64,000 nucleotides of DNA from contig NC_086383.1 of assembly GCF_036588685.1 (NCBI RefSeq), positions 24,986,001 through 25,050,000 of the forward strand, read 5' to 3'. The position numbers and the translations under genes were made by a program. Shown here in pieces: positions 9,460 to 58,833 of this stretch; position 1 is the first letter of the stretch, and each line of letters opens with the position of its first letter. The notes beneath the pieces are model-generated. The model did not search any database and had not been told where the DNA came from. It saw only the letters and a list, made by a program, of their open reading frames with translations. The DNA is from Mytilus trossulus (Eukaryota).

Positions 9460-10583
9460 TTTCTATGAATACTACGACTAAAGATTGGGAAAAACACGAA
9501 TCCAACCAACAAAAAAGGGCTTCCTTTCAACACTATACAAATGAAACTAAACATTGAAAACCCCAGGGATGAACTCATGTCTACAATTTGGAAATTAGTA
9601 TGGCGTTCATTATCACTGAACTAGTATAATATTTGCTAAGGGGCCAGCTGGAGGGCGCCTCCGGGTGCGGGAATTTCTCGCTACATTGAAGACCTGTTAG
9701 TGAACTTCTTCTGTTGTTTTTTATATGGTCGGGTTGTTGTCTCTTTGACTATTTCCCCATTTCCATTCTCAATTTTATCTTCTGCAGGAAGTTGCAGTTC
9801 TTGCTCCATTAGTGATATTTAGTAAAATAGAGGCGAAAGATTCAAGAGAGACATTCAAACTTATAAGTCGAATACAAACTGACAACGCCATTGCTAAAAC
9901 AAACACCAACATACAATTGATAGTACATAAAAAATAGAATAGAAACTAAAGATTTAGCAGCACGAATATCATCAAAACCTATAGGGTTGAACGCATGTGC
10001 TCTGAAAGGGAAAGCAGATCATGTTCCATGTGGCACCCGTCGTGTGGCTCATGTTTGTACAAACACGGTACTAGGTATAATTTGGGAGGTCAGATGTGTG
10101 AAAAGGAAACCTGCATATGACGCTCAAAGGTAACTGAACGAATACATTGTCCTCTTGAAGTACTGCTGTAAAGTTGCTTTTTATATTATTTGCACTTTTT
10201 TTTATCAAAAGAAGCAGTTTCTATCACAAATGATATCTAACGTATCTTATATATTTATTTCAAACTTGGAAAGATGTCTGTTTGTCAAAATTTAATACCA
10301 TACTCATGTGAAAAAAGAGGTCTCATTCGCAATTTTTTTTTTATCAGAATGCTAAAAAAAATTATCAGGAAATGAAAATGTTATTAACTTCGTCTCATTA
10401 ATTATAAAAGCTTATAAAAGTACCAGCAATGTATTACTATTCCAGTTTCCGGATCATCAAATCATGGAGTGAAATAAAAGAGTTCGGTTTTTTTCTTATT
10501 CTTTTTCTGGACTATTTTTTTTTTTATTAAATCTAAATCAAGGAACACAAAGTCCAGGAGTTGCCGTTAGTTGCTATTATATA

Positions 10584-13500
10584 TAGGGTTGTCACTGACT
10601 CAGACGTACTTATGAATATAATTATTTTCTGTGACTGTATCTTACATTAATTTGTAGGATCCTTTACTATAGATAATTTAGCTGATCTGTAACAATAACA
10701 TCTTCATGCCTTATATATCATGTACTGTAGTACGCCGCTAGATTAAAACTGACGTGGAAAGGTAACATATGGCCACCGAAAGCTCTTTTTTTGAGAGCCC
10801 AGGTGGTCATGTGGTCTAGCGGGACGGCTGCAGTGCAGGCGATTTGGTGTCACGATATCACAGTAGCATGGGTTCAAATCCCGGCGAGGGAAGAACCAAA
10901 AAAATTTGCGAAAGCAAATTTACAGATCTAACATTGTTGGGTTGATGTTTAGACGAGTTGTATATACATTATGTACACAGCCATGTATCACCATCATTGA
11001 TGGCGATCCGATGGATACATCTGTTGTAGGGTTGTCACTGACTCAGACGTACTTATGAATATAATTATTTTCTGTGACTGTATCTTACATTAATTTGTAG
11101 GATCCTTTACTATAGATAATTTAGCTGATCTGTAACAATAACATCTTCATGCCTTATATATCATGTACTGTAGTACGCCGCTAGATTAAAACTGACGTGG
11201 AAAGGTAACATATGGCCACCGAAAGCTCTTTTTTTGAGAGCCCAGGTGGTCATGTGGTCTAGCGGGACGGCTGCAGTGCAGGCGATTTGGTGTCACGATA
11301 TCACAGTAGCATGGGTTCAAATCCCGGCGAGGGAAGAACCAAAAAAATTTGCGAAAGCAAATTTACAGATCTAACATTGTTGGGTTGATGTTTAGACGAG
11401 TTGTATATACATTATGTACACAGCCATGTATCACCATCATTGATGGCGATCCGATGGATACATCTGTTGTAGGGTTGTCACTGACTCAGACGTACTTATG
11501 AATATAATTATTTTCTGTGACTGTATCTTACATTAATTTGTAGGATCCTTTACTATAGATAATTTAGCTGATCTGTAACAATAACATCTTCATGCCTTAT
11601 ATATCATGTACTGTAGTACGCCGCTAGATTAAAACTGACGTGGAAAGGTAACATATGGCCACCGAAAGCTCTTTTTTTGAGAGCCCAGGTGGTCATGTGG
11701 TCTAGCGGGACGGCTGCAGTGCAGGCGATTTGGTGTCACGATATCACAGTAGCATGGGTTCAAATCCCGGCGAGGGAAGAACCAAAAAAATTTGCGAAAG
11801 CAAATTTACAGATCTAACATTGTTGGGTTGATGTTTAGACGAGTTGTATATACATTATGTACACAGCCATGTATCACCATCATTGATGGCGATCCGATGG
11901 ATACATCTGTTGTAGGGTTGTCACTGACTCAGACGTACTTATGAATATAATTATTTTCTGTGACTGTATCTTACATTAATTTGTAGGATCCTTTACTATA
12001 GATAATTTAGCTGATCTGTAACAATAACATCTTCATGCCTTATATATCATGTACTGTAGTACGCCGCTAGATTAAAACTGACGTGGAAAGGTAACATATG
12101 GCCACCGAAAGCTCTTTTTTTGAGAGCCCAGGTGGTCATGTGGTCTAGCGGGACGGCTGCAGTGCAGGCGATTTGGTGTCACGATATCACAGTAGCATGG
12201 GTTCAAATCCCGGCGAGGGAAGAACCAAAAAAATTTGCGAAAGCAAATTTACAGATCTAACATTGTTGGGTTGATGTTTAGACGAGTTGTATATACATTA
12301 TGTACACAGCCATGTATCACCATCATTGATGGCGATCCGATGGATACATCTGTTGTAGGGTTGTCACTGACTCAGACGTACTTATGAATATAATTATTTT
12401 CTGTGACTGTATCTTACATTAATTTGTAGGATCCTTTACTATAGATAATTTAGCTGATCTGTAACAATAACATCTTCATGCCTTATATATCATGTACTGT
12501 AGTACGCCGCTAGATTAAAACTGACGTGGAAAGGTAACATATGGCCACCGAAAGCTCTTTTTTTGAGAGCCCAGGTGGTCATGTGGTCTAGCGGGACGGC
12601 TGCAGTGCAGGCGATTTGGTGTCACGATATCACAGTAGCATGGGTTCAAATCCCGGCGAGGGAAGAACCAAAAAAATTTGCGAAAGCAAATTTACAGATC
12701 TAACATTGTTGGGTTGATGTTTAGACGAGTTGTATATACATTATGTACACAGCCATGTATCACCATCATTGATGGCGATCCGATGGATACATCTGTTGTA
12801 GGGTTGTCACTGACTCAGACGTACTTATGAATATAATTATTTTCTGTGACTGTATCTTACATTAATTTGTAGGATCCTTTACTATAGATAATTTAGCTGA
12901 TCTGTAACAATAACATCTTCATGCCTTATATATCATGTACTGTAGTACGCCGCTAGATTAAAACTGACGTGGAAAGGTAACATATGGCCACCGAAAGCTC
13001 TTTTTTTGAGAGCCCAGGTGGTCATATGGTCTAGCGGGACGGCTGCAGTGCAGGCGATTTGGTGTCACGATATCACAGTAGCATGGGTTCAAATCCCGGC
13101 GAGGGAAGAACCAAAAAAATTTGCGAAAGCAAATTTACAGATCTAACATTGTTGGGTTGATGTTTAGACGAGTTATATATACATTATGTACACAGCCATG
13201 TATCACCATCATTGATGGCGATCCGATGGATACATCTGTTGTAGGGTTGTCACTGACTCAGACGTACTTATGAATATAATTATTTTCTGTGACTGTATCT
13301 TACATTAATTTGTAGGATCCTTTACTATAGATAATTTAGCTGATCTGTAACAATAACATCTTCATGCCTTATATATCATGTACTGTAGTACGCCGCTAGA
13401 TTAAAACTGACGTGGAAAGGTAACATATGGCCACCGAAAGCTCTTTTTTTGAGAGCCCAGGTGGTCATGTGGTCTAGCGGGACGGCTGCAGTGCAGGCGA

Positions 13501-15387
13501 TTTGGTGTCACGATATCACAGTAGCATGGGTTCAAATCCCGGCGAGGGAAGAACCAAAAAAATTTGCGAAAGCAAATTTACAGATCTAACATTGTTGGGT
13601 TGATGTTTAGACGAGTTGTATATACATTATGTACACAGCCATGTATCACCATCATTGATGGCGATCCGATGGATACATCTGTTGTAGGGTTGTCACTGAC
13701 TCAGACGTACTTATGAATATAATTATTTTCTGTGACTGTATCTTACATTAATTTGTAGGATCCTTTACTATAGATAATTTAGCTGATCTGTAACAATAAC
13801 ATCTTCATGCCTTATATATCATGTACTGTAGTACGCCGCTAGATTAAAACTGACGTGGAAAGGTAACATATGGCCACCGAAGCTCTTTTTTTGAGAGCCC
13901 AGGTGGTCATGTGGTCTAGCGGGACGGCTGCAGTGCAGGCGATTTGGTGTCACGATATCACAGTAGCATGGGTTCAAATCCCGGCGAGGGAAGAACCAAA
14001 AAAATTTGCGAAAGCAAATTTACAGATCTAACATTGTTGGGTTGATGTTTAGACGAGTTGTATATACATTATGTACACAGCCATGTATCACCATCATTGA
14101 TGGCGATCCGATGGATACATCTGTTGTAGGGTTGTCACTGACTCAGACGTACTTATGAATATAAATATTTTCTGTGACTGTATCTTACATTAATTTGTAG
14201 GATCCTTTACTATAGATAATTTAGCTGATCTGTAACAATAACATCTTCATGCCTTATATATCATGTACTGTAGTACGCCGCTAGATTAAAACTGACGTGG
14301 AAAGGTAACATATGGCCACCGAAAGCTCTTTTTTTTGAGAGCCCAGGTGGTCATGTGGTCTAGCGGGACGGCTGCAGTGCAGGCGATTTGGTGTCACGAT
14401 ATCACAGTAGCATGGGTTCAAATCCCGGCGAGGGAAGAACCAAAAAAATTTGCGAAAGCAAATTTACAGATCTAACATTGTTGGGTTGATGTTTAGACGA
14501 GTTATATATACATTATGTACACAGCCATGTATCACCATCATTGATGGCGATCCGATGGATACATCTGTTGTAGGGTTGTCACTGACTCAGACGTACTTAT
14601 GAATATAATTATTTTCTGTGACTGTATCTTACATTAATTTGTAGGATCCTTTACTATAGATAATTTAGCTGATCTGTAACAATAACATCTTCATGCCTTA
14701 TATATCATGTACTGTAGTACGCCGCTAGATTAAAACTGACGTGGAAAGGTAACATATGGCCACCGAAAGCTCTTTTTTTGAGAGCCCAGGTGGTCATGTG
14801 GTCTAGCGGGACGGCTGCAGTGCAGGCGATTTGGTGTCACGATATCACAGTAGCATGGGTTCAAATCCCGGCGAGGGAAGAACCAAAAAAATTTGCGAAA
14901 GCAAATTTACAGATCTAACATTGTTGGGTTGATGTTTAGACGAGTTGTATATACATTATGTACACAGCCATGTATCACCATCATTGATGGCGATCCGATG
15001 GATACATCTGTTGTAGGGTTGTCACTGACTCAGACGTACTTATGAATATAATTATTTTCTGTGACTGTATCTTACATTAATTTGTAGGATCCTTTACTAT
15101 AGATAATTTAGCTGATCTGTAACAATAACATCTTCATGCCTTATATATCATGTACTGTAGTACGCCGCTAGATTAAAACTGACGTGGAAAGGTAACATAT
15201 GGCCACCGAAGCTCTTTTTTTGAGAGCCCAGGTGGTCATGTGGTCTAGCGGGACGGCTGCAGTGCAGGCGATTTGGTGTCACGATATCACAGTAGCATGG
15301 GTTCAAATCCCGGCGAGGGAAGAACCAAAAAAATTTGCGAAAGCAAATTTACAGATCTAACATTGTTGGGTTGATGTTTAGACGAGT

Positions 15388-15389
<2 letters not shown>
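10584..15389 (+). repeat. Tandem array of ~10.9 x 443-bp units with a tRNA-derived (SINE-like) Pol III head, inserted in a TA microsatellite
   Basis: Unit starts (tagggttgtcactg) at 10584, 11027, 11470, 11913, 12356, 12799, 13242, 13685, 14127, 14571 and 15014 (partial). Units are near-identical and the array is flanked by TA runs. The empty paralogous site is at ~57769-57774. Confidence 0.95.
10793..11235 (+). ncRNA. Predicted ~440-nt structured Pol III transcript (one per array unit)
   Basis: A-box TGGTCATGTGG 10804-10814, B-box/T-arm GGTTCAAATCC 10871-10881, T7 at 11229-11235, and extensive 5'/3' end pairing with G-U wobbles. Transcription is inferred, not shown. Confidence 0.5.

Positions 15390-15423
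<34 letters not shown>
15390..15423. repeat. (TA)n microsatellite at the array's right junction
   Basis: Uninterrupted tatata run directly after gacgagttg. Confidence 0.95.
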
Positions 15424-15425
<2 letters not shown>

Positions 15426-15427
<2 letters not shown>

Positions 15428-16045
15428 GAAGATGTGGTATGATTGCAAATGAGGCAGTTCTCCACAAGAGAACAAATGACACATAAATTAAAAACTATAG
15501 GTCACCCTACGACCTTCAATAATGATCACATCCAATTCTGCAAAGTCAGATATAAAAGGCCCCGAATGAGTTAACTAACAGCATAATTTATGTACAAAAA
15601 AATGAAAAAAAATAAATATGTAGCACGATCAACAAACAACAACCACTTAATTACATGATTCTGACTTTGGACATACATACAGAATGTGGCGGTGTTACAC
15701 ATGTTAGAGAGATCTCAACCCTCCATTTACATGGAACAGTGGTGTAACAGTACAACATAAGAACAAACTAGAAAAATCAGTTGAAAAAGGCTCATCAGAT
15801 GGATACAAATAGAAATACATCTACGAAAAGCGTGGATGTAGCCGGGTTTTTGTATATCCCAACATTTACAGCGAGTTCCGAACCACTAACAACTAATAAA
15901 AAAAAAATATTCATCTAAGACTAAATTATTAATCGGTACACATCCAATGATCCTATAGATTTAGCGTACAGACGACATGAACAGTCAGAGGTAAACATGA
16001 CTTGCGCAATGCCAAGATACAAGTGTCGACAGACTGTATATCCAT
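15426..16045 (+). repeat. Interspersed repeat (aagaagatgtggtatgattg family)
   Basis: Shares its start with 18916-19035, 57782 onward and an inverted copy at ~8030-8165. The right boundary is approximate. Confidence 0.6.
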
Positions 16046-24985: not shown

Positions 24986-26612
24986 TAAAGGATCAGCAAA
25001 TGAAAATGAACGTAAACAATTTAAAGTTTGGTCATCGAACCATAAGAAAAGAAATCGACACCACAAAGGAGTGTAGATAATATCAGTATATAATTTAATG
25101 GATAATAAGTATGACATGCGCCATAAGGCATGAACTTCTTTATTGAATTAAATACTTAAGTAAAGTAAAACTGCTGATTTTGTTTCCGTAAATAATCCTG
25201 GTTGTAACAAAAAAACAGTATTGGTTCAGCAGACTCCATAAGGAAATACATTTACGTTAACTCAACTTATAAAAAATAAGAATTGAAGATCAAAGGAATT
25301 GTCAAATGAATTAACAAAACTAAGGTAAACGGGATCAATTAAAATTAAAACGAAATGTGTGTAGGATGGGAAGATTCGATTGTGTTTTCTTTGTCACTTG
25401 TTTAGCAGTGTTTACAGTACTTCCAATAAAATACATGTTTTATGTTTTGAATATCATACTTTACTAAATTAAGAAGACACTGACATTTATTATATATTAA
25501 CAAAAGAATTTTTCATTAAATAAATATATAAAATGGGTACATACACTCTTTTCAGTATTATCAAGATAAAAAAAAGTCGCAAAATAAAAGAATTTAAAAA
25601 ATTTGAGACAAAAAGCTTCAAAATAAAACATATATATATCGTCTAAAATATGCTTTTCATCGAAAAACAGTTGGTTGTTTTCAAACTAAAAGAAGATGCA
25701 TATGGTTGCTGTATGTGTGTTAGCAATGAAGTAATGCTCAATATGATTTCAACTACGACTACAATTTCGTTTTAGAATATTCACCTTGAATTATAGAACT
25801 ATCACTTCATCAGTTTGTATTTATATATAAGAGGGACGAAAGATACCAAAGGGACTGTCAAACTCATAAATCTAAAACAAACTAACAACGCCATAGCTAA
25901 AAATGGAAAAGACAAACAGAAAAACAACAGCACACATGACACAACATAGAAAAATAAAGAATAAACAACACGAATATAACAGGTGTTCATTGCTTTGATT
26001 ACTTTGCCATTGTCTACAAACAAAAATGCCTGTACTCAGTGAGAATTATGACAGTTGTTATCCATATATTTGATGAATTGAACTTTTAATTTTGCCTTTT
26101 GATTAAGGACTTTTGATTTTTTGTTTTTTATTTTCCTCGGAGTGGGGTATATTTGTTATTTTACTTTTTGAAATTTATAAACTTCACATTTGTCTTACAT
26201 GCTGCTATGTTCAACAATCAAAATGATATTAATACTTTGATAAAAAAAAAGATACCAAAGATATATTTAAAGCTCAAATGTCGACGAAAAACAATATGGC
26301 AATAAACTAAAAAGCACAAAAGACAAACTAATCAACATAAAATACGATGACCTATAGCTGTTGATTTCTGTCATTTTTGGGGATCTTGTGCAGAGTTGTC
26401 TCATTGGCAATCCTACTACATCTTCTTTTTTGTAGATACAAGATTACATTGTGTTAGCAAGAAAGAGACAGTGGATATCAAAGGGACGATATAAATGCAT
26501 AAGCCGAAGATAGACAAAACAAAAACCCACAGAAAATGAGAAATAGAAATAATGAATGGAGCATCAACAGTTAACAATACACTACATAGATATCTAAAGA
26601 TTGAGCAACTCC

Positions 26613-56217: not shown

Positions 56218-58833
56218 AGAGATGAGCATGTACTTACAGTTTGAATCACACACTTAGAGCTACAAGAAATTCAACTGCATATTGCGACGAAGACATTATT
56301 TCGGATTCTGTTTTTTAGAAATGACATGTTTTGAAGAAGAAAAAAACATGTAATTTTCTTTCACTTATTATATAATCAGTATTTTATAAATAAAAATATT
56401 TTTGTTCAATTACTTGAAACTGTTATCATTGGAATTGCCTCTAAACACTCCCCTAGTATATCTTGCCCGATTATACAACCTTTGCACTTCAAAGCAAAAT
56501 TCCTTGGGACCAACCTTATTGCATTTCATGAACTAATATAGAAAAACATTTCACTATTTCTTCAAGTATTACAATTAGAATTCATTATTGTTTTATATAA
56601 TTTCATGTATGTTTGTAAGTAATTATCATTGTTTTTAAAATACGAATAAAGTTCTTTAAATCTGGTTTATGCTGACATGTTTAATTTGTCTCTAAAAAGC
56701 ATCTTATTACCTTAAACTTGCCATCACCAAGACGGTTCCTGGATTTATAAACTGTTTATAAAACGAAAGAGAAGATCACGGTACTAAGAACCAAAACTCA
56801 AATAAATCGTAATACACTATGACCAAAATGTAGAACGTCGGGTTTTCTATGAATACTGCAACTAAATATTGAGAGAAAGACACGAAACCAACCAAAAAAA
56901 ATGACTTCCTTTCAACACTATACAAATGAAACTACAATTGAGAAACCCAGGGAGGAATTCATGTTCTTCTGCAGGAAGTTGCAGTTCTTGTTCCACCATT
57001 GTGATGTTTAGTAAAATAGAGGCGAAAGATGCAAGAGGGACATTCAAACTTATAAGTCGAATATAAACTGACAACGCCATTGCTAAAACAAACACCAACA
57101 TACAATTAATAGTACACAAAACATAGAATAGAAACTAAAGATTTCGCAGCACGAACATTATCAAAACTTAGGGTGGAACTTGTGTGCTCCGAAAGGGAAA
57201 GCAGATCATGTTCCATGTGGCACCCGTCGTGTGGCTCATGTTTGTACAAACACGGTACTAGGTATAATTTGGGAGGTCAGACGTGTGAAAAGGAAACCTG
57301 CATATGACGCTCATAGGTAACTGAACAAATACATTGTCCTCTCGAAGTACTGCTGTAAAGTTGCTTTTTATATTATTTGCACTTTTTTTTTTTATCAAAA
57401 AAAGCAGTTTCTTGCACAAATGATAACGTATCTTACATATTTATTTCAATCTTGGAAATAAATCTGTTTGTCAAAATTTAACACCATATTCATGTGAAAA
57501 AGGAGGTCTCATTCGTATATATTTTTTTAACAGAATGCTAAAAAAAAATATCAGGAAATGAAAATGTAATTAACTCCGTCTCATTAATTCTAGTTGTGTC
57601 GGTCTAAAGGTACCAGCATTGTGTTACATTTCCAGTTTCCGGATCATCAAATCATGGAGTGAAATAAAATAATTAATTTTTTTCTTATCCTTTTTCTTGA
57701 CTATTTTTTTCTGTTTTATTAAATCTAAAGCAAGGAACACAAAGTCCAGTATAGTTGTCGTTAGTTGCTATATAAATAAAAAAGAAGATGTGGTATGATC
57801 GCAAATGAGACAGCCCTCCACAAGAGAACAAATGACACATAAATTAACAACTATAGGTCAGTATACGACTTTCAACAATGAGCACATCCCATTCCGCAGT
57901 CAGATATAAAAGGCCCCGAAATCAAAAATGTTAAACAATTCAAATAAGTTAACTAACGGCATAATTTATGTAAAAAAAAAATGAAAAAAAATAAATATGT
58001 AGCACGATCAAAAAACAACAACCACTTAATTACATGCTTCTCACTTTGGACAGGCACGTACATACAGAATGTGGCGGTGTTACACATGTTAAAGAGATCT
58101 CAACCCTCCATTTACATGGAACAGTGGTGTAACAGTACAACATAAGAACAAACTAGAAAAATCAGTCGAAAAAGGCTCATCAGATGGATACAAATAGAAA
58201 TACATCTACGAAAAGCGTGGACGTAGCCGGGTATTTGTATATCCCAACATTTACAGCGAGTTCCGAACCACTAACAACTAATAAAAAAAAATATTCATCT
58301 AAGACTAAATTATTAATCGGTACACATCCAATGATCCTATAGATTTAGCGTACAGACGACATGAACAGTCAGAGAAAAACATGACTTGCGCAATGCCAAG
58401 ATACAAGTGTCGACAGATTGTATATCCATGAAGGTGTATATGTATAAGACAATAATATTTAGTTTGCATTTAATTTTCTGATAAAAAAAATTCAATACTA
58501 ATACCAACAAAAACTGTATTTAATTATATAATTACAGTAATGAATTGATAACCTGGCTGGTATATTTAACTGGTTTTTTTTTTCAAGAAATCGTTTTGAC
58601 TTACGAAGGGTAGCTGATTTAATTTAGTAAATTGTTCCACATTCTGTTACTAAGGGGCCTTTTGTAGCTTATCATACGATAAATGTTTTTACAGTTGTTG
58701 AAAATCGTGTTAAGACAGTTTATAACAGCATTATTTACATTTGATCCTGACTGATTGATAGCTTTTACTTAACGGCCAGTGGCAAATATTTCATGCATGT
58801 TTAGATACATTAATTAACAGCAGTTATATAATT

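What the first reader, a model, noticed from the sequence alone, without database searches (positions are those of the whole stretch)
10584..15389. The 443-bp array reads as a head-to-tail concatemer of a complete, end-paired Pol III RNA: a candidate ribozyme-less circular-RNA retroelement
Seen: re-phasing the unit to start at GAGAGC (10793) puts an A box at +12, a B box at +79 and a T7 tract as the last nucleotides (11229-11235). The next GAGAGC follows with no spacer. The ends of this predicted RNA pair: GAGAGC/GCUCUU; GGUGGUCAUGUG (10802-10813) with CAUAUGGCCACC (11209-11220); UCUAGCGG (10815-10822) with CCGCUAGA (11178-11185); GCUGCAGUGCA (10827-10837) with UGUACUGUAGU (11164-11174). The non-Watson-Crick pairs in these stems are G-U on the + strand, which points to RNA-level structure on that strand. 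There is also a GAAA-tetraloop hairpin (10902-10921) and a long-range UUACAGAUC/GAUCUGUAA stem. Known: SINEs usually insert as monomers, and tandem non-LTR retrozymes rely on hammerheads. Inference: the array was copied from a ligated circular RNA, or by repeated template jumping, and Pol III start/stop rather than self-cleavage defines the monomer. Caveat: an internal TTTT (~11068) could terminate transcription earlier.
Basis: partly seen in the sequence, partly recalled or inferred. Interest (0 to 1): 0.85.

Follow-up and report, generated by a model that had tools for sequence, protein, structure and literature searches.

The report
Ribozyme-less tRNA-headed tandem retroelement in (TA)n
The 443-base tandem array is one young copy of a family with several thousand copies. 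The family has no genes of its own, has a tRNA-like promoter head, and is copied through a single-stranded (most likely RNA) template into TA microsatellites in the manner of Penelope-like retroelements, yet it lacks the self-cutting ribozyme that known elements of this tandem kind carry.

Summary
There is a 443-bp array of 10.9 copies at 99% identity, with A and B boxes, a T7 run abutting GAGAGC, and end-pairing stems whose only non-Watson-Crick pairs are G-U on the + strand.

No known ribozyme or tRNA model matches. Spread is polar, which needs a single-stranded + sense template.
- 2,583 genomic copies end at one unit site, TTTAGACGAGTTG followed by a TA run.
- 549 end at a second site, AGACGTACT followed by a TA run.
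- Only 3 end at a third, longer TA run that has no AGAC upstream.
- Only 28 show the opposite polarity at the first site.

5' ends vary. Insertions sit in (TA)n and often form head-to-head inverted pairs. Genuine Penelope-like elements (PLEs) in this genome show the same signature, and one 911-aa family ends at TTTAGAC + 3 nt + (TA)n 119 times.

The mobile unit is not the proposed Pol III monomer. Almost all insertions, even those shorter than one unit, run across the T7|GAGAGC junction, and that junction is copied faithfully (T7 in 73 of 89).

Best reading: a PLE-dependent, ribozyme-less relative of retrozymes with a SINE-like head. Other first readers of this scan flagged the same family in other windows.

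The parts
10584..15395 (+). Tandem array: 209-bp 5' partial unit (unit positions 235-443), 10 full units, then a 3' partial unit ending in the unit's TATATA (positions 169-174).
   Evidence: The first five full units are identical and later ones differ by 1-2 changes.
15390..15423 (+). (TA)17 tract at the 3' end of the insertion. Its first 6 bases are also the unit's own TATATA.
   Evidence: The same arrangement occurs at 2,583 genomic 3' ends.
10576..10585 (+). 5' junction: host ATTATATA abutting unit position 235/237. The boundary is ambiguous by the shared TA.
10793..11235 (+).
10800..10897 (+). tRNA-like head with the A-box-like TGGTCTAGCGG (10812-10822) and the B box (10871-10881).
   Evidence: Read directly from the sequence. 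The consensus B box is perfect. ARAGORN and Rfam do not call it a tRNA.
11229..11235 (+). T7 run immediately before the next GAGAGC. It is a potential Pol III terminator and also the loop of a junction hairpin, GCUCU/AGAGC.
11068..11071 (+). Internal T4 run, a possible early Pol III stop.
10948..10966 (+). Main 3'-end signal (site 1): TTTAGAC + GAGTTG + TATATA.
   Evidence: 2,583 genomic copies end here, 4,139 read through, and 28 show the opposite polarity.
11045..11063 (+). Second 3'-end signal (site 2): AGAC + GTACT + TA-rich run.
   Evidence: 549 genomic copies end here, plus 21 at the downstream ATATA.
11155..11161 (+). Third and longest TA run (TATATAT, site 3), with no AGAC upstream. 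It is almost never used as an end.
   Evidence: 3 genomic ends.
10793..10837 (+). 5' arm of the terminal pairing (four stems). It pairs with 11164-11230.
11164..11230 (+). 3' arm of the terminal pairing, a degenerate inverted copy of the head's 5' part.
10902..10921 (+). GAAA-loop hairpin. Several 5' truncation points (unit positions 112-130) fall in it.
10301..10583 (+). Left flank: part of an older dispersed repeat that the array interrupted.
15424..15900 (+). Right flank: the continuation of the same older repeat.
57487..58285 (+). Paralogous uninterrupted copy of the host repeat (the empty site, around 57765-57780, reads TATATAAATAAAAAAG).
   Evidence: A single 802-nt alignment at 87.5% identity spans the joined flanks.

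Best explanation
The array is a recent insertion of a non-coding, non-autonomous retroelement family with a 441-443 bp unit. The family has at least 3,100 insertions and at least 6,700 units, about 0.2% of this 1.3-Gb mussel-like genome.

Mechanism:
- Shown: integration is polar and uses a + sense single strand. The 3' end is set at AGAC + 2-10 nt + a TA run, and that TA run merges with a (TA)n target.
- Inferred: this is target-primed reverse transcription. The nicked (TA)n DNA end primes on the UAUA stretch downstream of AGAC in the element's RNA. Synthesis then runs back through the tRNA-like head and across the T7|GAGAGC junction into upstream unit copies, and it stops at variable points. 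This gives 5'-truncated products of 0.6 to more than 10 units.
- Inferred: priming from both nicked strands gives the head-to-head inverted pairs.
- Inferred: the enzyme comes from a Penelope-like element (PLE). The best candidate is the intact 911-aa RT + C-terminal GIY-YIG family, which ends at TTTAGAC + 3 nt + (TA)n. Naiad-type PLEs are the alternative.
- Inferred: the template spans the unit junction, so it is a multimeric read-through transcript of an existing array or a circular monomer.
- Inferred from sequence only: the tRNA-type A and B boxes supply transcription.

The element works like an animal non-LTR retrozyme but has no ribozyme.
For: Polarity and site choice, as whole-genome exact counts:
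- 2,583 ends at site 1, against 28 of opposite polarity at the same palindromic TA run.
- 549 ends at site 2.
- 3 ends at the longer TA run that lacks AGAC.
- AGAC occurs only twice in the unit, each time just upstream of a used site.

Structure of insertions:
- 5' ends are scattered, with none at unit positions 165-185. Most clean 5' flanks are (TA)n.
- Head-to-head twins with both 3' ends facing outward on (TA)n occur in L013, L017, L046, L047, L023 and L044. Large examples are visible in the coordinates (C1:2.826-2.837 Mb and C1:15.508-15.515 Mb).
- The window copy has an empty-site paralogue.

Link to PLEs:
- The genome holds at least 149 GIY-YIG hits with many intact ORFs. Domain orders are RT + C-terminal EN (911 aa) and N-terminal EN (1,056 aa).
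- The 911-aa PLE is flanked by (TA)n, has the inverted plus tandem structure, and ends at TTTAGACTGA + (TA)n, 119 times genome-wide.
- Family copies abut PLE ends in 5 of about 20 PLE loci.
- TAGAC lies within 16 nt of 10 of 152 non-family (TA)n flanks, against a background of 1.06%.

Literature: PLEs form tandem/inverted insertions, and Naiads prefer (TA)n and lack hammerheads (PMC8557442). Animal retrozymes are 150-450 bp tandem repeats linked to PLEs (PMC7229834; bioRxiv 10.64898/2026.07.22.740005).

No ribozyme, tRNA or ORF was found in the unit.
Against: - No RNA data were obtained, so neither transcription nor the template form is shown.
- No extended sequence similarity links the unit to any sampled PLE. 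The only shared feature is the 7-nt TTTAGAC motif plus the TA run.
- Only about 8 PLE loci were examined, and no Naiad 3' end was seen.
- T7 should stop Pol III, so a Pol III origin for junction-spanning templates needs read-through, circularisation, or another polymerase.
- Part of the copy number in long arrays could come from later unequal crossing-over.
- 5' ends cluster at unit positions 214-255, 112-130 and 346-353. I attribute this to RT pauses or joining preferences, without proof.
Confidence: 0.68

Rival explanations
1. Pol III starts at GAGAGC and stops in the T7 run. The end-paired 443-nt RNA is ligated into a circle without a ribozyme, and rolling-circle reverse transcription of that circle (or repeated 5'-to-3' template jumps) yields the concatemer.
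For: - The A and B boxes and T7 are correctly placed, and the ends pair with G-U only on the + strand.
- Every insertion crosses the junction, as a circular template predicts.
- Arrays are internally homogeneous: the window's first 5 units are identical, and several arrays carry fixed non-consensus variants.
- No 100% identical source array was found elsewhere.
- Two insertions start exactly at unit position 2, the predicted transcription start (L017).
- Mussel retrozyme RNAs are known to be circular (PMC7229834).
Against: - The junction is T7 in 73 of 89 units and its variants are array-specific. Pol III stops inside T runs, so a joint remade in each generation should be shorter and heterogeneous.
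- No cleavage or ligation device is known that would give RtcB-compatible ends here.
- Multimeric read-through RNA from the thousands of existing arrays explains the same facts.
- There are no RNA data.
Confidence: 0.17
2. DNA-level spread of a SINE-derived satellite. Extrachromosomal circles or break-induced copying at fragile (TA)n tracts are joined by TA microhomology, and unequal crossing-over follows.
For: Junctions lie in TA-rich sequence on both sides. (TA)n tracts are known fragile, cruciform-forming sites (general knowledge). Some arrays are heterogeneous, for example L069.
Against: - A double-stranded template and a palindromic TA repeat predict both polarities equally, but the counts are 2,583 against 28.
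- The longest TA run in the unit is used 3 times, against 2,583 and 549 for the two runs preceded by AGAC.
- The same end rule holds for an RT-encoding PLE.
Confidence: 0.06
3. Rolling-circle (Helitron- or IS91-like) one-ended DNA transposition of the - strand, with a fixed origin next to the TA run and variable termination. Tandem copies would arise from continued rolling-circle synthesis.
For: One end is fixed and the other variable; the structure is tandem; insertion is in AT-rich DNA.
Against: - There is no 5' TC / 3' CTRR and no subterminal hairpin at the fixed end.
- There are two alternative fixed ends.
- The head-to-head twins and the (TA)n preference match PLEs that encode RT and GIY-YIG in the same genome.
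Confidence: 0.04
4. A Helenus-type miniature LTR retrotransposon (TRIM with a tRNA-like Pol III promoter in the LTR), arranged LTR-internal-LTR in tandem. The LTR would be unit positions 235-443 + 1-177 and the internal part positions 178-234.
For: - Helenus families occur in Mytilidae, and tandem arrays of such elements are known (PMC10886601).
- About a quarter of 5' ends fall at unit positions 214-255, and several copies are about 0.9 or about 1.9 units long.
Against: - 5' ends are not precise (214, 222, 223, 232, 235, 242, 243, 246, 246, 247, 255), and many lie elsewhere.
- There is no primer-binding site next to the putative LTR end and no purine tract before the next one.
- Flanks are (TA)n rather than 5-bp duplications.
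- A second 3' end and inverted twins do not fit integrase-mediated insertion.
Confidence: 0.03

Closest known systems
Animal non-LTR retrozymes (tandem repeats with type I hammerheads; Cervera and de la Pena 2020, PMC7229834; Li et al. 2026 preprint)
   Same: Non-coding units of 150-450 bp; GC content of 40%; arrays from dimers to long multimers dispersed over the genome; highly structured + strand RNA; occurrence in mussels; association with Penelope-like elements.
   Different: No hammerhead or any other Rfam ribozyme, and the CUGANGA core is absent. The unit carries tRNA-type A and B boxes plus a T7 run instead. Circular RNA is not shown here.
Penelope-like elements, canonical EN+ and Naiad (Craig et al. 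2021, PMC8557442)
   Same: (TA)n target bias, partial-tandem and inverted insertion structure, 5' truncation, and in this genome the TTTAGAC + few nt + (TA)n 3' end.
   Different: No ORF (longest 66 codons). No extended similarity to the sampled PLE tails. It has its own Pol III-type promoter head.
tRNA-derived SINEs
   Same: A 5' head with A and B boxes at tRNA-like spacing, followed by a short A run. It is non-autonomous and depends on another element's reverse transcriptase.
   Different: Copies are circularly permuted relative to the promoter and mostly cross the unit junction. They are tandem, have no LINE-derived tail or poly(A) end, and have a (TA)n-merged 3' end. The likely partner is a PLE, not a LINE.
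Helenus/Cassandra (TRIMs with a Pol III promoter, Kojima 2024, PMC10886601)
   Same: A small-RNA-gene-derived promoter inside a non-SINE retroelement; tandem arrays occur; present in Mytilidae.
   Different: No LTR termini, primer-binding site, purine tract or 5-bp duplications. Polar 3' ends and ragged 5' ends.
Bivalve tandem-repeat-bearing MITE/Helentron elements and dispersed satellites
   Same: Short arrays of a satellite-like unit scattered through a bivalve genome and bordered by a microsatellite.
   Different: No fixed flanking arms or terminal inverted repeats outside the array. Ends lie inside the unit and are strand-polar.

Membership tests
Animal non-LTR retrozyme | Short (150-450 bp) non-coding tandem units of low GC content, dispersed in many arrays | tested here: met
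   443 bp, GC 0.40, no ORF over 66 codons, arrays on all large contigs.
Animal non-LTR retrozyme | A type I hammerhead ribozyme in every unit | tested here: not met
   No Rfam ribozyme at E up to 10 in 917-nt and 191-nt scans. CUGANGA is absent on both strands. The CUGACGU...GAAA stretch near the junction lacks A9 and the A15.1-U16.1 pair (my reading of the sequence).
Animal non-LTR retrozyme | Expressed as a unit-length circular RNA | not testable with these tools
PLE-mobilised non-autonomous element | Insertion bias for microsatellites, here (TA)n | tested here: met
   The window copy lies in a TA-rich site of an older repeat.
PLE-mobilised non-autonomous element | Partial-tandem plus inverted (head-to-head) insertion structure with 5' truncation | tested here: met
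   L013, L017, L023, L044, L046, L047. The same structure is seen in the 911-aa PLE loci L064 and L070.
PLE-mobilised non-autonomous element | 3' end or tail shared with an autonomous PLE of the same genome | tested here: inconclusive
   Only the TTTAGAC + 2-6 nt + (TA)n motif is shared. nhmmer and blastn find no longer similarity in the PLE loci held.
tRNA-derived SINE | Head recognisable as a tRNA, with A and B boxes | tested here: inconclusive
   The boxes match (B box 11/11 in the consensus, A box 9/11). ARAGORN and the Rfam tRNA model give no hit.
tRNA-derived SINE | Copies begin at the transcription start and end in a LINE-type tail or A-rich tail, with target-site duplications | tested here: not met
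   Only 2 of about 40 clean insertions start at unit position 2; the rest are permuted across the junction. The 3' end merges with (TA)n.
Helenus / TRIM | Precise LTR termini, primer-binding site, purine tract, 5-bp duplications | tested here: not met
   Ragged 5' ends, no primer-binding site or purine tract at the required places, (TA)n flanks.
Helitron | 5' TC, 3' CTRR with a subterminal hairpin, insertion between A and T | tested here: not met
   The fixed end reads GAGTTG + TA run or GTACT + TA run. There are two alternative ends and variable 5' ends.

The most novel reading that the evidence does not exclude
This is the first retrozyme-type element that has replaced the ribozyme with a tRNA-like module. 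It would be a Penelope-dependent 'SINE' that makes its own Pol III transcripts. Its unit-length RNA would be released and circularised by host tRNA-processing and ligation enzymes rather than by self-cleavage. Its AGAC + spacer + (UA)n stretch would be the signal that the Penelope reverse transcriptase and endonuclease use to choose the RNA 3' end at (TA)n targets. That signal would also be shared by several unrelated passenger families in the genome.
Probability: 0.22. Interest if true: 0.82.

Novelty: new variant of a known kind. Interest (0 to 1): 0.62.

Why it matters
How Penelope-like elements integrate is unsolved, including why they form tandem and inverted copies and why they choose microsatellites. 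No in vitro system exists for them (PMC8557442). This family is a small, very abundant and very young natural reporter of that machinery. Thousands of insertions reveal a simple rule for the 3' end (AGAC, a short spacer, then a TA run), strict strand polarity, and twin priming.

The family also shows that the retrozyme lifestyle of short non-coding tandem units riding on PLEs does not need a hammerhead. That bears on whether ribozymes are essential to that life cycle or are merely passengers. Combining a Pol III tRNA-type head with a PLE-style insertion would extend the SINE concept beyond LINE partners; I found no published case in four literature searches.

In practice, the family is a source of insertion polymorphisms and of 0.4-5 kb palindromes at (TA)n sites in a mussel genome.

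Tried and rejected
The more divergent C22 arrays (95-96% identity) and further PLE 3' ends could not be fetched, so the covariation analysis was limited to copies 92-100% identical and is uninformative.
- L066 lead: a 71% match of unit positions 106-180 near a Naiad copy proved to be a low-copy sequence, not a Naiad tail. I dropped it.
- Hammerhead remnant: other first readers suggested one near the junction. It lacks two essential core features and no covariance model scores it.
- Metagenome scan: it returned one near-identical copy (L071), which confirms the structure but adds no divergence.
- Site 2 count: my first pattern placed the boundary at unit position 271 and gave only 21 hits. Re-reading the junctions moved the boundary to AGACGTACT + TA run, which gave 549.
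- BLAST end label: the BLAST end at unit position 177 is really position 174, extended by 3 nt across one mismatch into the TA tract.
- Rejected explanations: Helitron, TRIM and eccDNA readings were considered and rejected as set out under the rival explanations.
- tRNA-Glu resemblance: the head resembles tRNA-Glu from my memory only. This was not tested.


Full report
**1. The observation**

Tandem Repeats Finder reports an array at 10584-15395 with period 443, 10.9 copies and 99% matches, followed by (TA)17 at 15390-15423.

- The A-box-like TGGTCTAGCGG lies at 10812-10822, with a second overlapping copy at +12.
- GGTTCAAATCC lies at 10871.
- T7 at 11229-11235 runs straight into GAGAGC.
- A T4 run lies at 11068.
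- The GAAA-loop hairpin and the 9-nt long-range repeat are present.

The + strand folds to -142 kcal/mol (z -5.5), and the predicted fold contains the four terminal stems. The - strand reaches only -112 kcal/mol (z -3.2).

In the family consensus the 38 terminal pairs include 8 G-U and no A-C. Read as a decayed inverted repeat, all eight differences are transitions of the one kind that keeps pairing on the + strand. This is unlikely without selection on a + strand single-stranded form.

ARAGORN and Rfam find no tRNA and no ribozyme, even at E up to 10 on 917-nt and 191-nt stretches. CUGANGA is absent from both strands, and no reading frame exceeds 66 codons.

**2. A family, not a local satellite**

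The window lies on contig 11 of a 1.3-Gb assembly with 14 chromosome-sized contigs. Other notes of this scan call the genome mussel-like; I did not verify the species.

The unit occurs on all large contigs at 92-100% identity, in arrays from less than one unit to more than ten units. The consensus of 54 distinct copies is 441 bp and has a perfect B box, GGTTCGAATCC. The window array carries its own variants (A at q17, A at q84, and an A7 run).

The window's first five full units are identical, and later units differ by 1-2 changes. The two flanks, joined, align in a single 802-nt stretch at 87.5% identity with an uninterrupted paralogue at 57487-58285. The array is therefore an insertion into a TA-rich spot of an older repeat.

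**3. Anatomy of the insertions**

I mapped about 60 array segments in 40 loci.
- 3' ends fall almost only at two unit positions. BLAST labels them q177 and q271; the true boundaries are the TATATA at q169-174 and the TA-rich run starting at q262. Both are followed by (TA)n.
- 5' ends are scattered, with clusters at q112-130, q214-255 and q346-353. None lies at q165-185.
- Clean 5' flanks are mostly (TA)n as well.
- Insertions shorter than one unit (for example 272, 334, 397 and 407 bp) still run across the q443/q1 junction.
- Only two insertions, both in L017, begin at q2.
- Head-to-head pairs with both 3' ends facing outward on (TA)n recur in L013, L017, L023, L044, L046 and L047.

Whole-genome exact pattern counts make these points quantitative.

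| Pattern | Count |
|---|---|
| Ends at TTTAGACGAGTTG + TA run (site 1) | 2,583 |
| Reads through site 1 | 4,139 |
| (TA)5 continuing into q175 onward (opposite polarity at site 1) | 28 |
| Ends at AGACGTACT + TA run (site 2) | 549 |
| Ends at the downstream ATATA of site 2 | 21 |
| Ends at the third and longest TA run, q363-369 (site 3) | 3 |

AGAC occurs exactly twice in the unit, 6 and 5 nt upstream of the two TA runs that are used.

Two conclusions follow.
- (TA)n is its own reverse complement, so any process that copies double-stranded DNA by TA microhomology should give both polarities. A ratio of about 90 to 1 requires a single-stranded + sense template.
- TA microhomology alone is not enough. 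An upstream AGAC, usually as TTTAGAC, marks the sites that are used.

**4. Which machinery**

The literature describes exactly this signature for Penelope-like elements (PLEs): pseudo-LTR tandem and inverted insertions, 5' truncation and microsatellite bias. Naiad-type PLEs prefer (TA)n and lack hammerheads (PMC8557442). Animal non-LTR retrozymes are 150-450 bp tandem repeats with type I hammerheads, are abundant as circular RNA in mussels, and are thought to ride on PLEs (PMC7229834; 2026 preprint).

This genome has at least 149 GIY-YIG matches, many in intact frames of 911-1,060 codons.
- L064 and L070 carry a 911-aa protein with RVT_1 followed by a C-terminal GIY-YIG domain.
- L063 carries a 1,056-aa protein with the GIY-YIG domain at residues 183-273, the Naiad domain order.

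The 911-aa element sits between (TA)n tracts and has an inverted partial copy plus tandem copies. It ends either at TATAGACTTT + (TA)n or, in its inverted partner, at the internal TTTAGACTGA + (TA)n. The latter end occurs 119 times genome-wide.

At least three further sequences end the same way: a family ending CAATTTAGACTCG, L034:1370, and window 25631. TAGAC lies within 16 nt of 10 of 152 non-family (TA)n flanks, against a background of 1.06%.

Copies of the 443-bp family abut PLE ends in L051, L052, L068, L069 and L070. This is far more often than a density of about one insertion per 0.4 Mb predicts, and it is expected if both use the same targets.

I found no longer similarity between the unit and the PLE loci I hold. 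The partner is therefore inferred from shared behaviour and a short motif, not from a shared tail.

**5. What the template was**

The T7|GAGAGC joint is T7 in 73 of 89 units, and the few variants (T6, T6 + AGAGC) are fixed within single arrays. The joint is thus inherited like any other internal sequence.
- This argues against repeated template jumps between separate Pol III transcripts within one event.
- It also argues against a joint that is rebuilt in each generation by termination inside the T run plus ligation; such a joint should be ragged and should shrink.
- It fits a multimeric read-through RNA from an existing array.
- It also fits a circle that was closed once and then copied many times.

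The facts that favour a monomer-derived multimer are the internal homogeneity of young arrays, their fixed non-consensus variants, and the lack of an identical source array elsewhere. Later unequal exchange or an unassembled source could give the same picture.

The two q2 starts fit a transcription start at q1-2.

**6. Rival explanations**

- DNA-level spread by circles or break repair fails on polarity and site choice.
- A Helitron-like rolling-circle transposon lacks the defining ends and would not explain two alternative ends or the match with RT-encoding PLEs.
- A Helenus-type miniature LTR element occurs in mytilids and carries tRNA-like promoters (PMC10886601), so it was worth testing. 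It would need precise LTR ends, a primer-binding site, a purine tract and 5-bp duplications, and none is present.

**7. Verdict**

The element is best filed as a new variant of a known kind. It is a relative of retrozymes, most likely PLE-dependent, that carries a SINE-like tRNA head instead of a hammerhead and follows a clear AGAC + (TA)n rule for its 3' end. Several first readers of this scan noted the same family in other windows. None of those notes had a follow-up that I could see, and I reached the PLE reading from the literature before seeing them.

Noticed in passing
L030:2761, L044:85/636/2071, L069:6202-6223, L040 and L045 flanks: Another dispersed repeat family ends in CAATTTAGACTCG + (TA)n and repeatedly sits next to copies of the 443-bp family. 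It is probably a second passenger of the same integration machinery.
   Followed up: partly
window 25631-25700 (- strand): An unrelated sequence ends ...CATATTTTAGACGA + (TA)4, the same AGAC + TA-run end as the family.
   Followed up: no
window 10301-10583 + 15424-15900 and 57487-58285: An older dispersed repeat is present twice in the window at 87.5% identity. One copy is interrupted by the array.
   Followed up: partly
L065:689-1484 and 2671-2804: A Naiad-type element (1,010-codon frame) has tandem repeats of about 270 bp in its 3' region and repeated blocks of 0.8-1.5 kb upstream of the ORF.
   Followed up: no
G000 C1:2826058-2836591 and C1:15508522-15514582 (coordinates): Large head-to-head palindromes of the family, with about 11 units on the - strand facing 4-12 units on the + strand.
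   Followed up: no
L071 (ENA marine metagenome contig ORXM01027908): A marine metagenome assembly holds a copy at 97-99% identity (unit positions 119-443 + 1-177 + (TA)n). This is presumably mussel DNA in the sample.
   Followed up: partly
G000 contig 22, 1.0-2.9 Mb: Many arrays of a subfamily at 95-96% identity are concentrated on one small contig. This may be a larger satellite-like block or an older source region.
   Followed up: no
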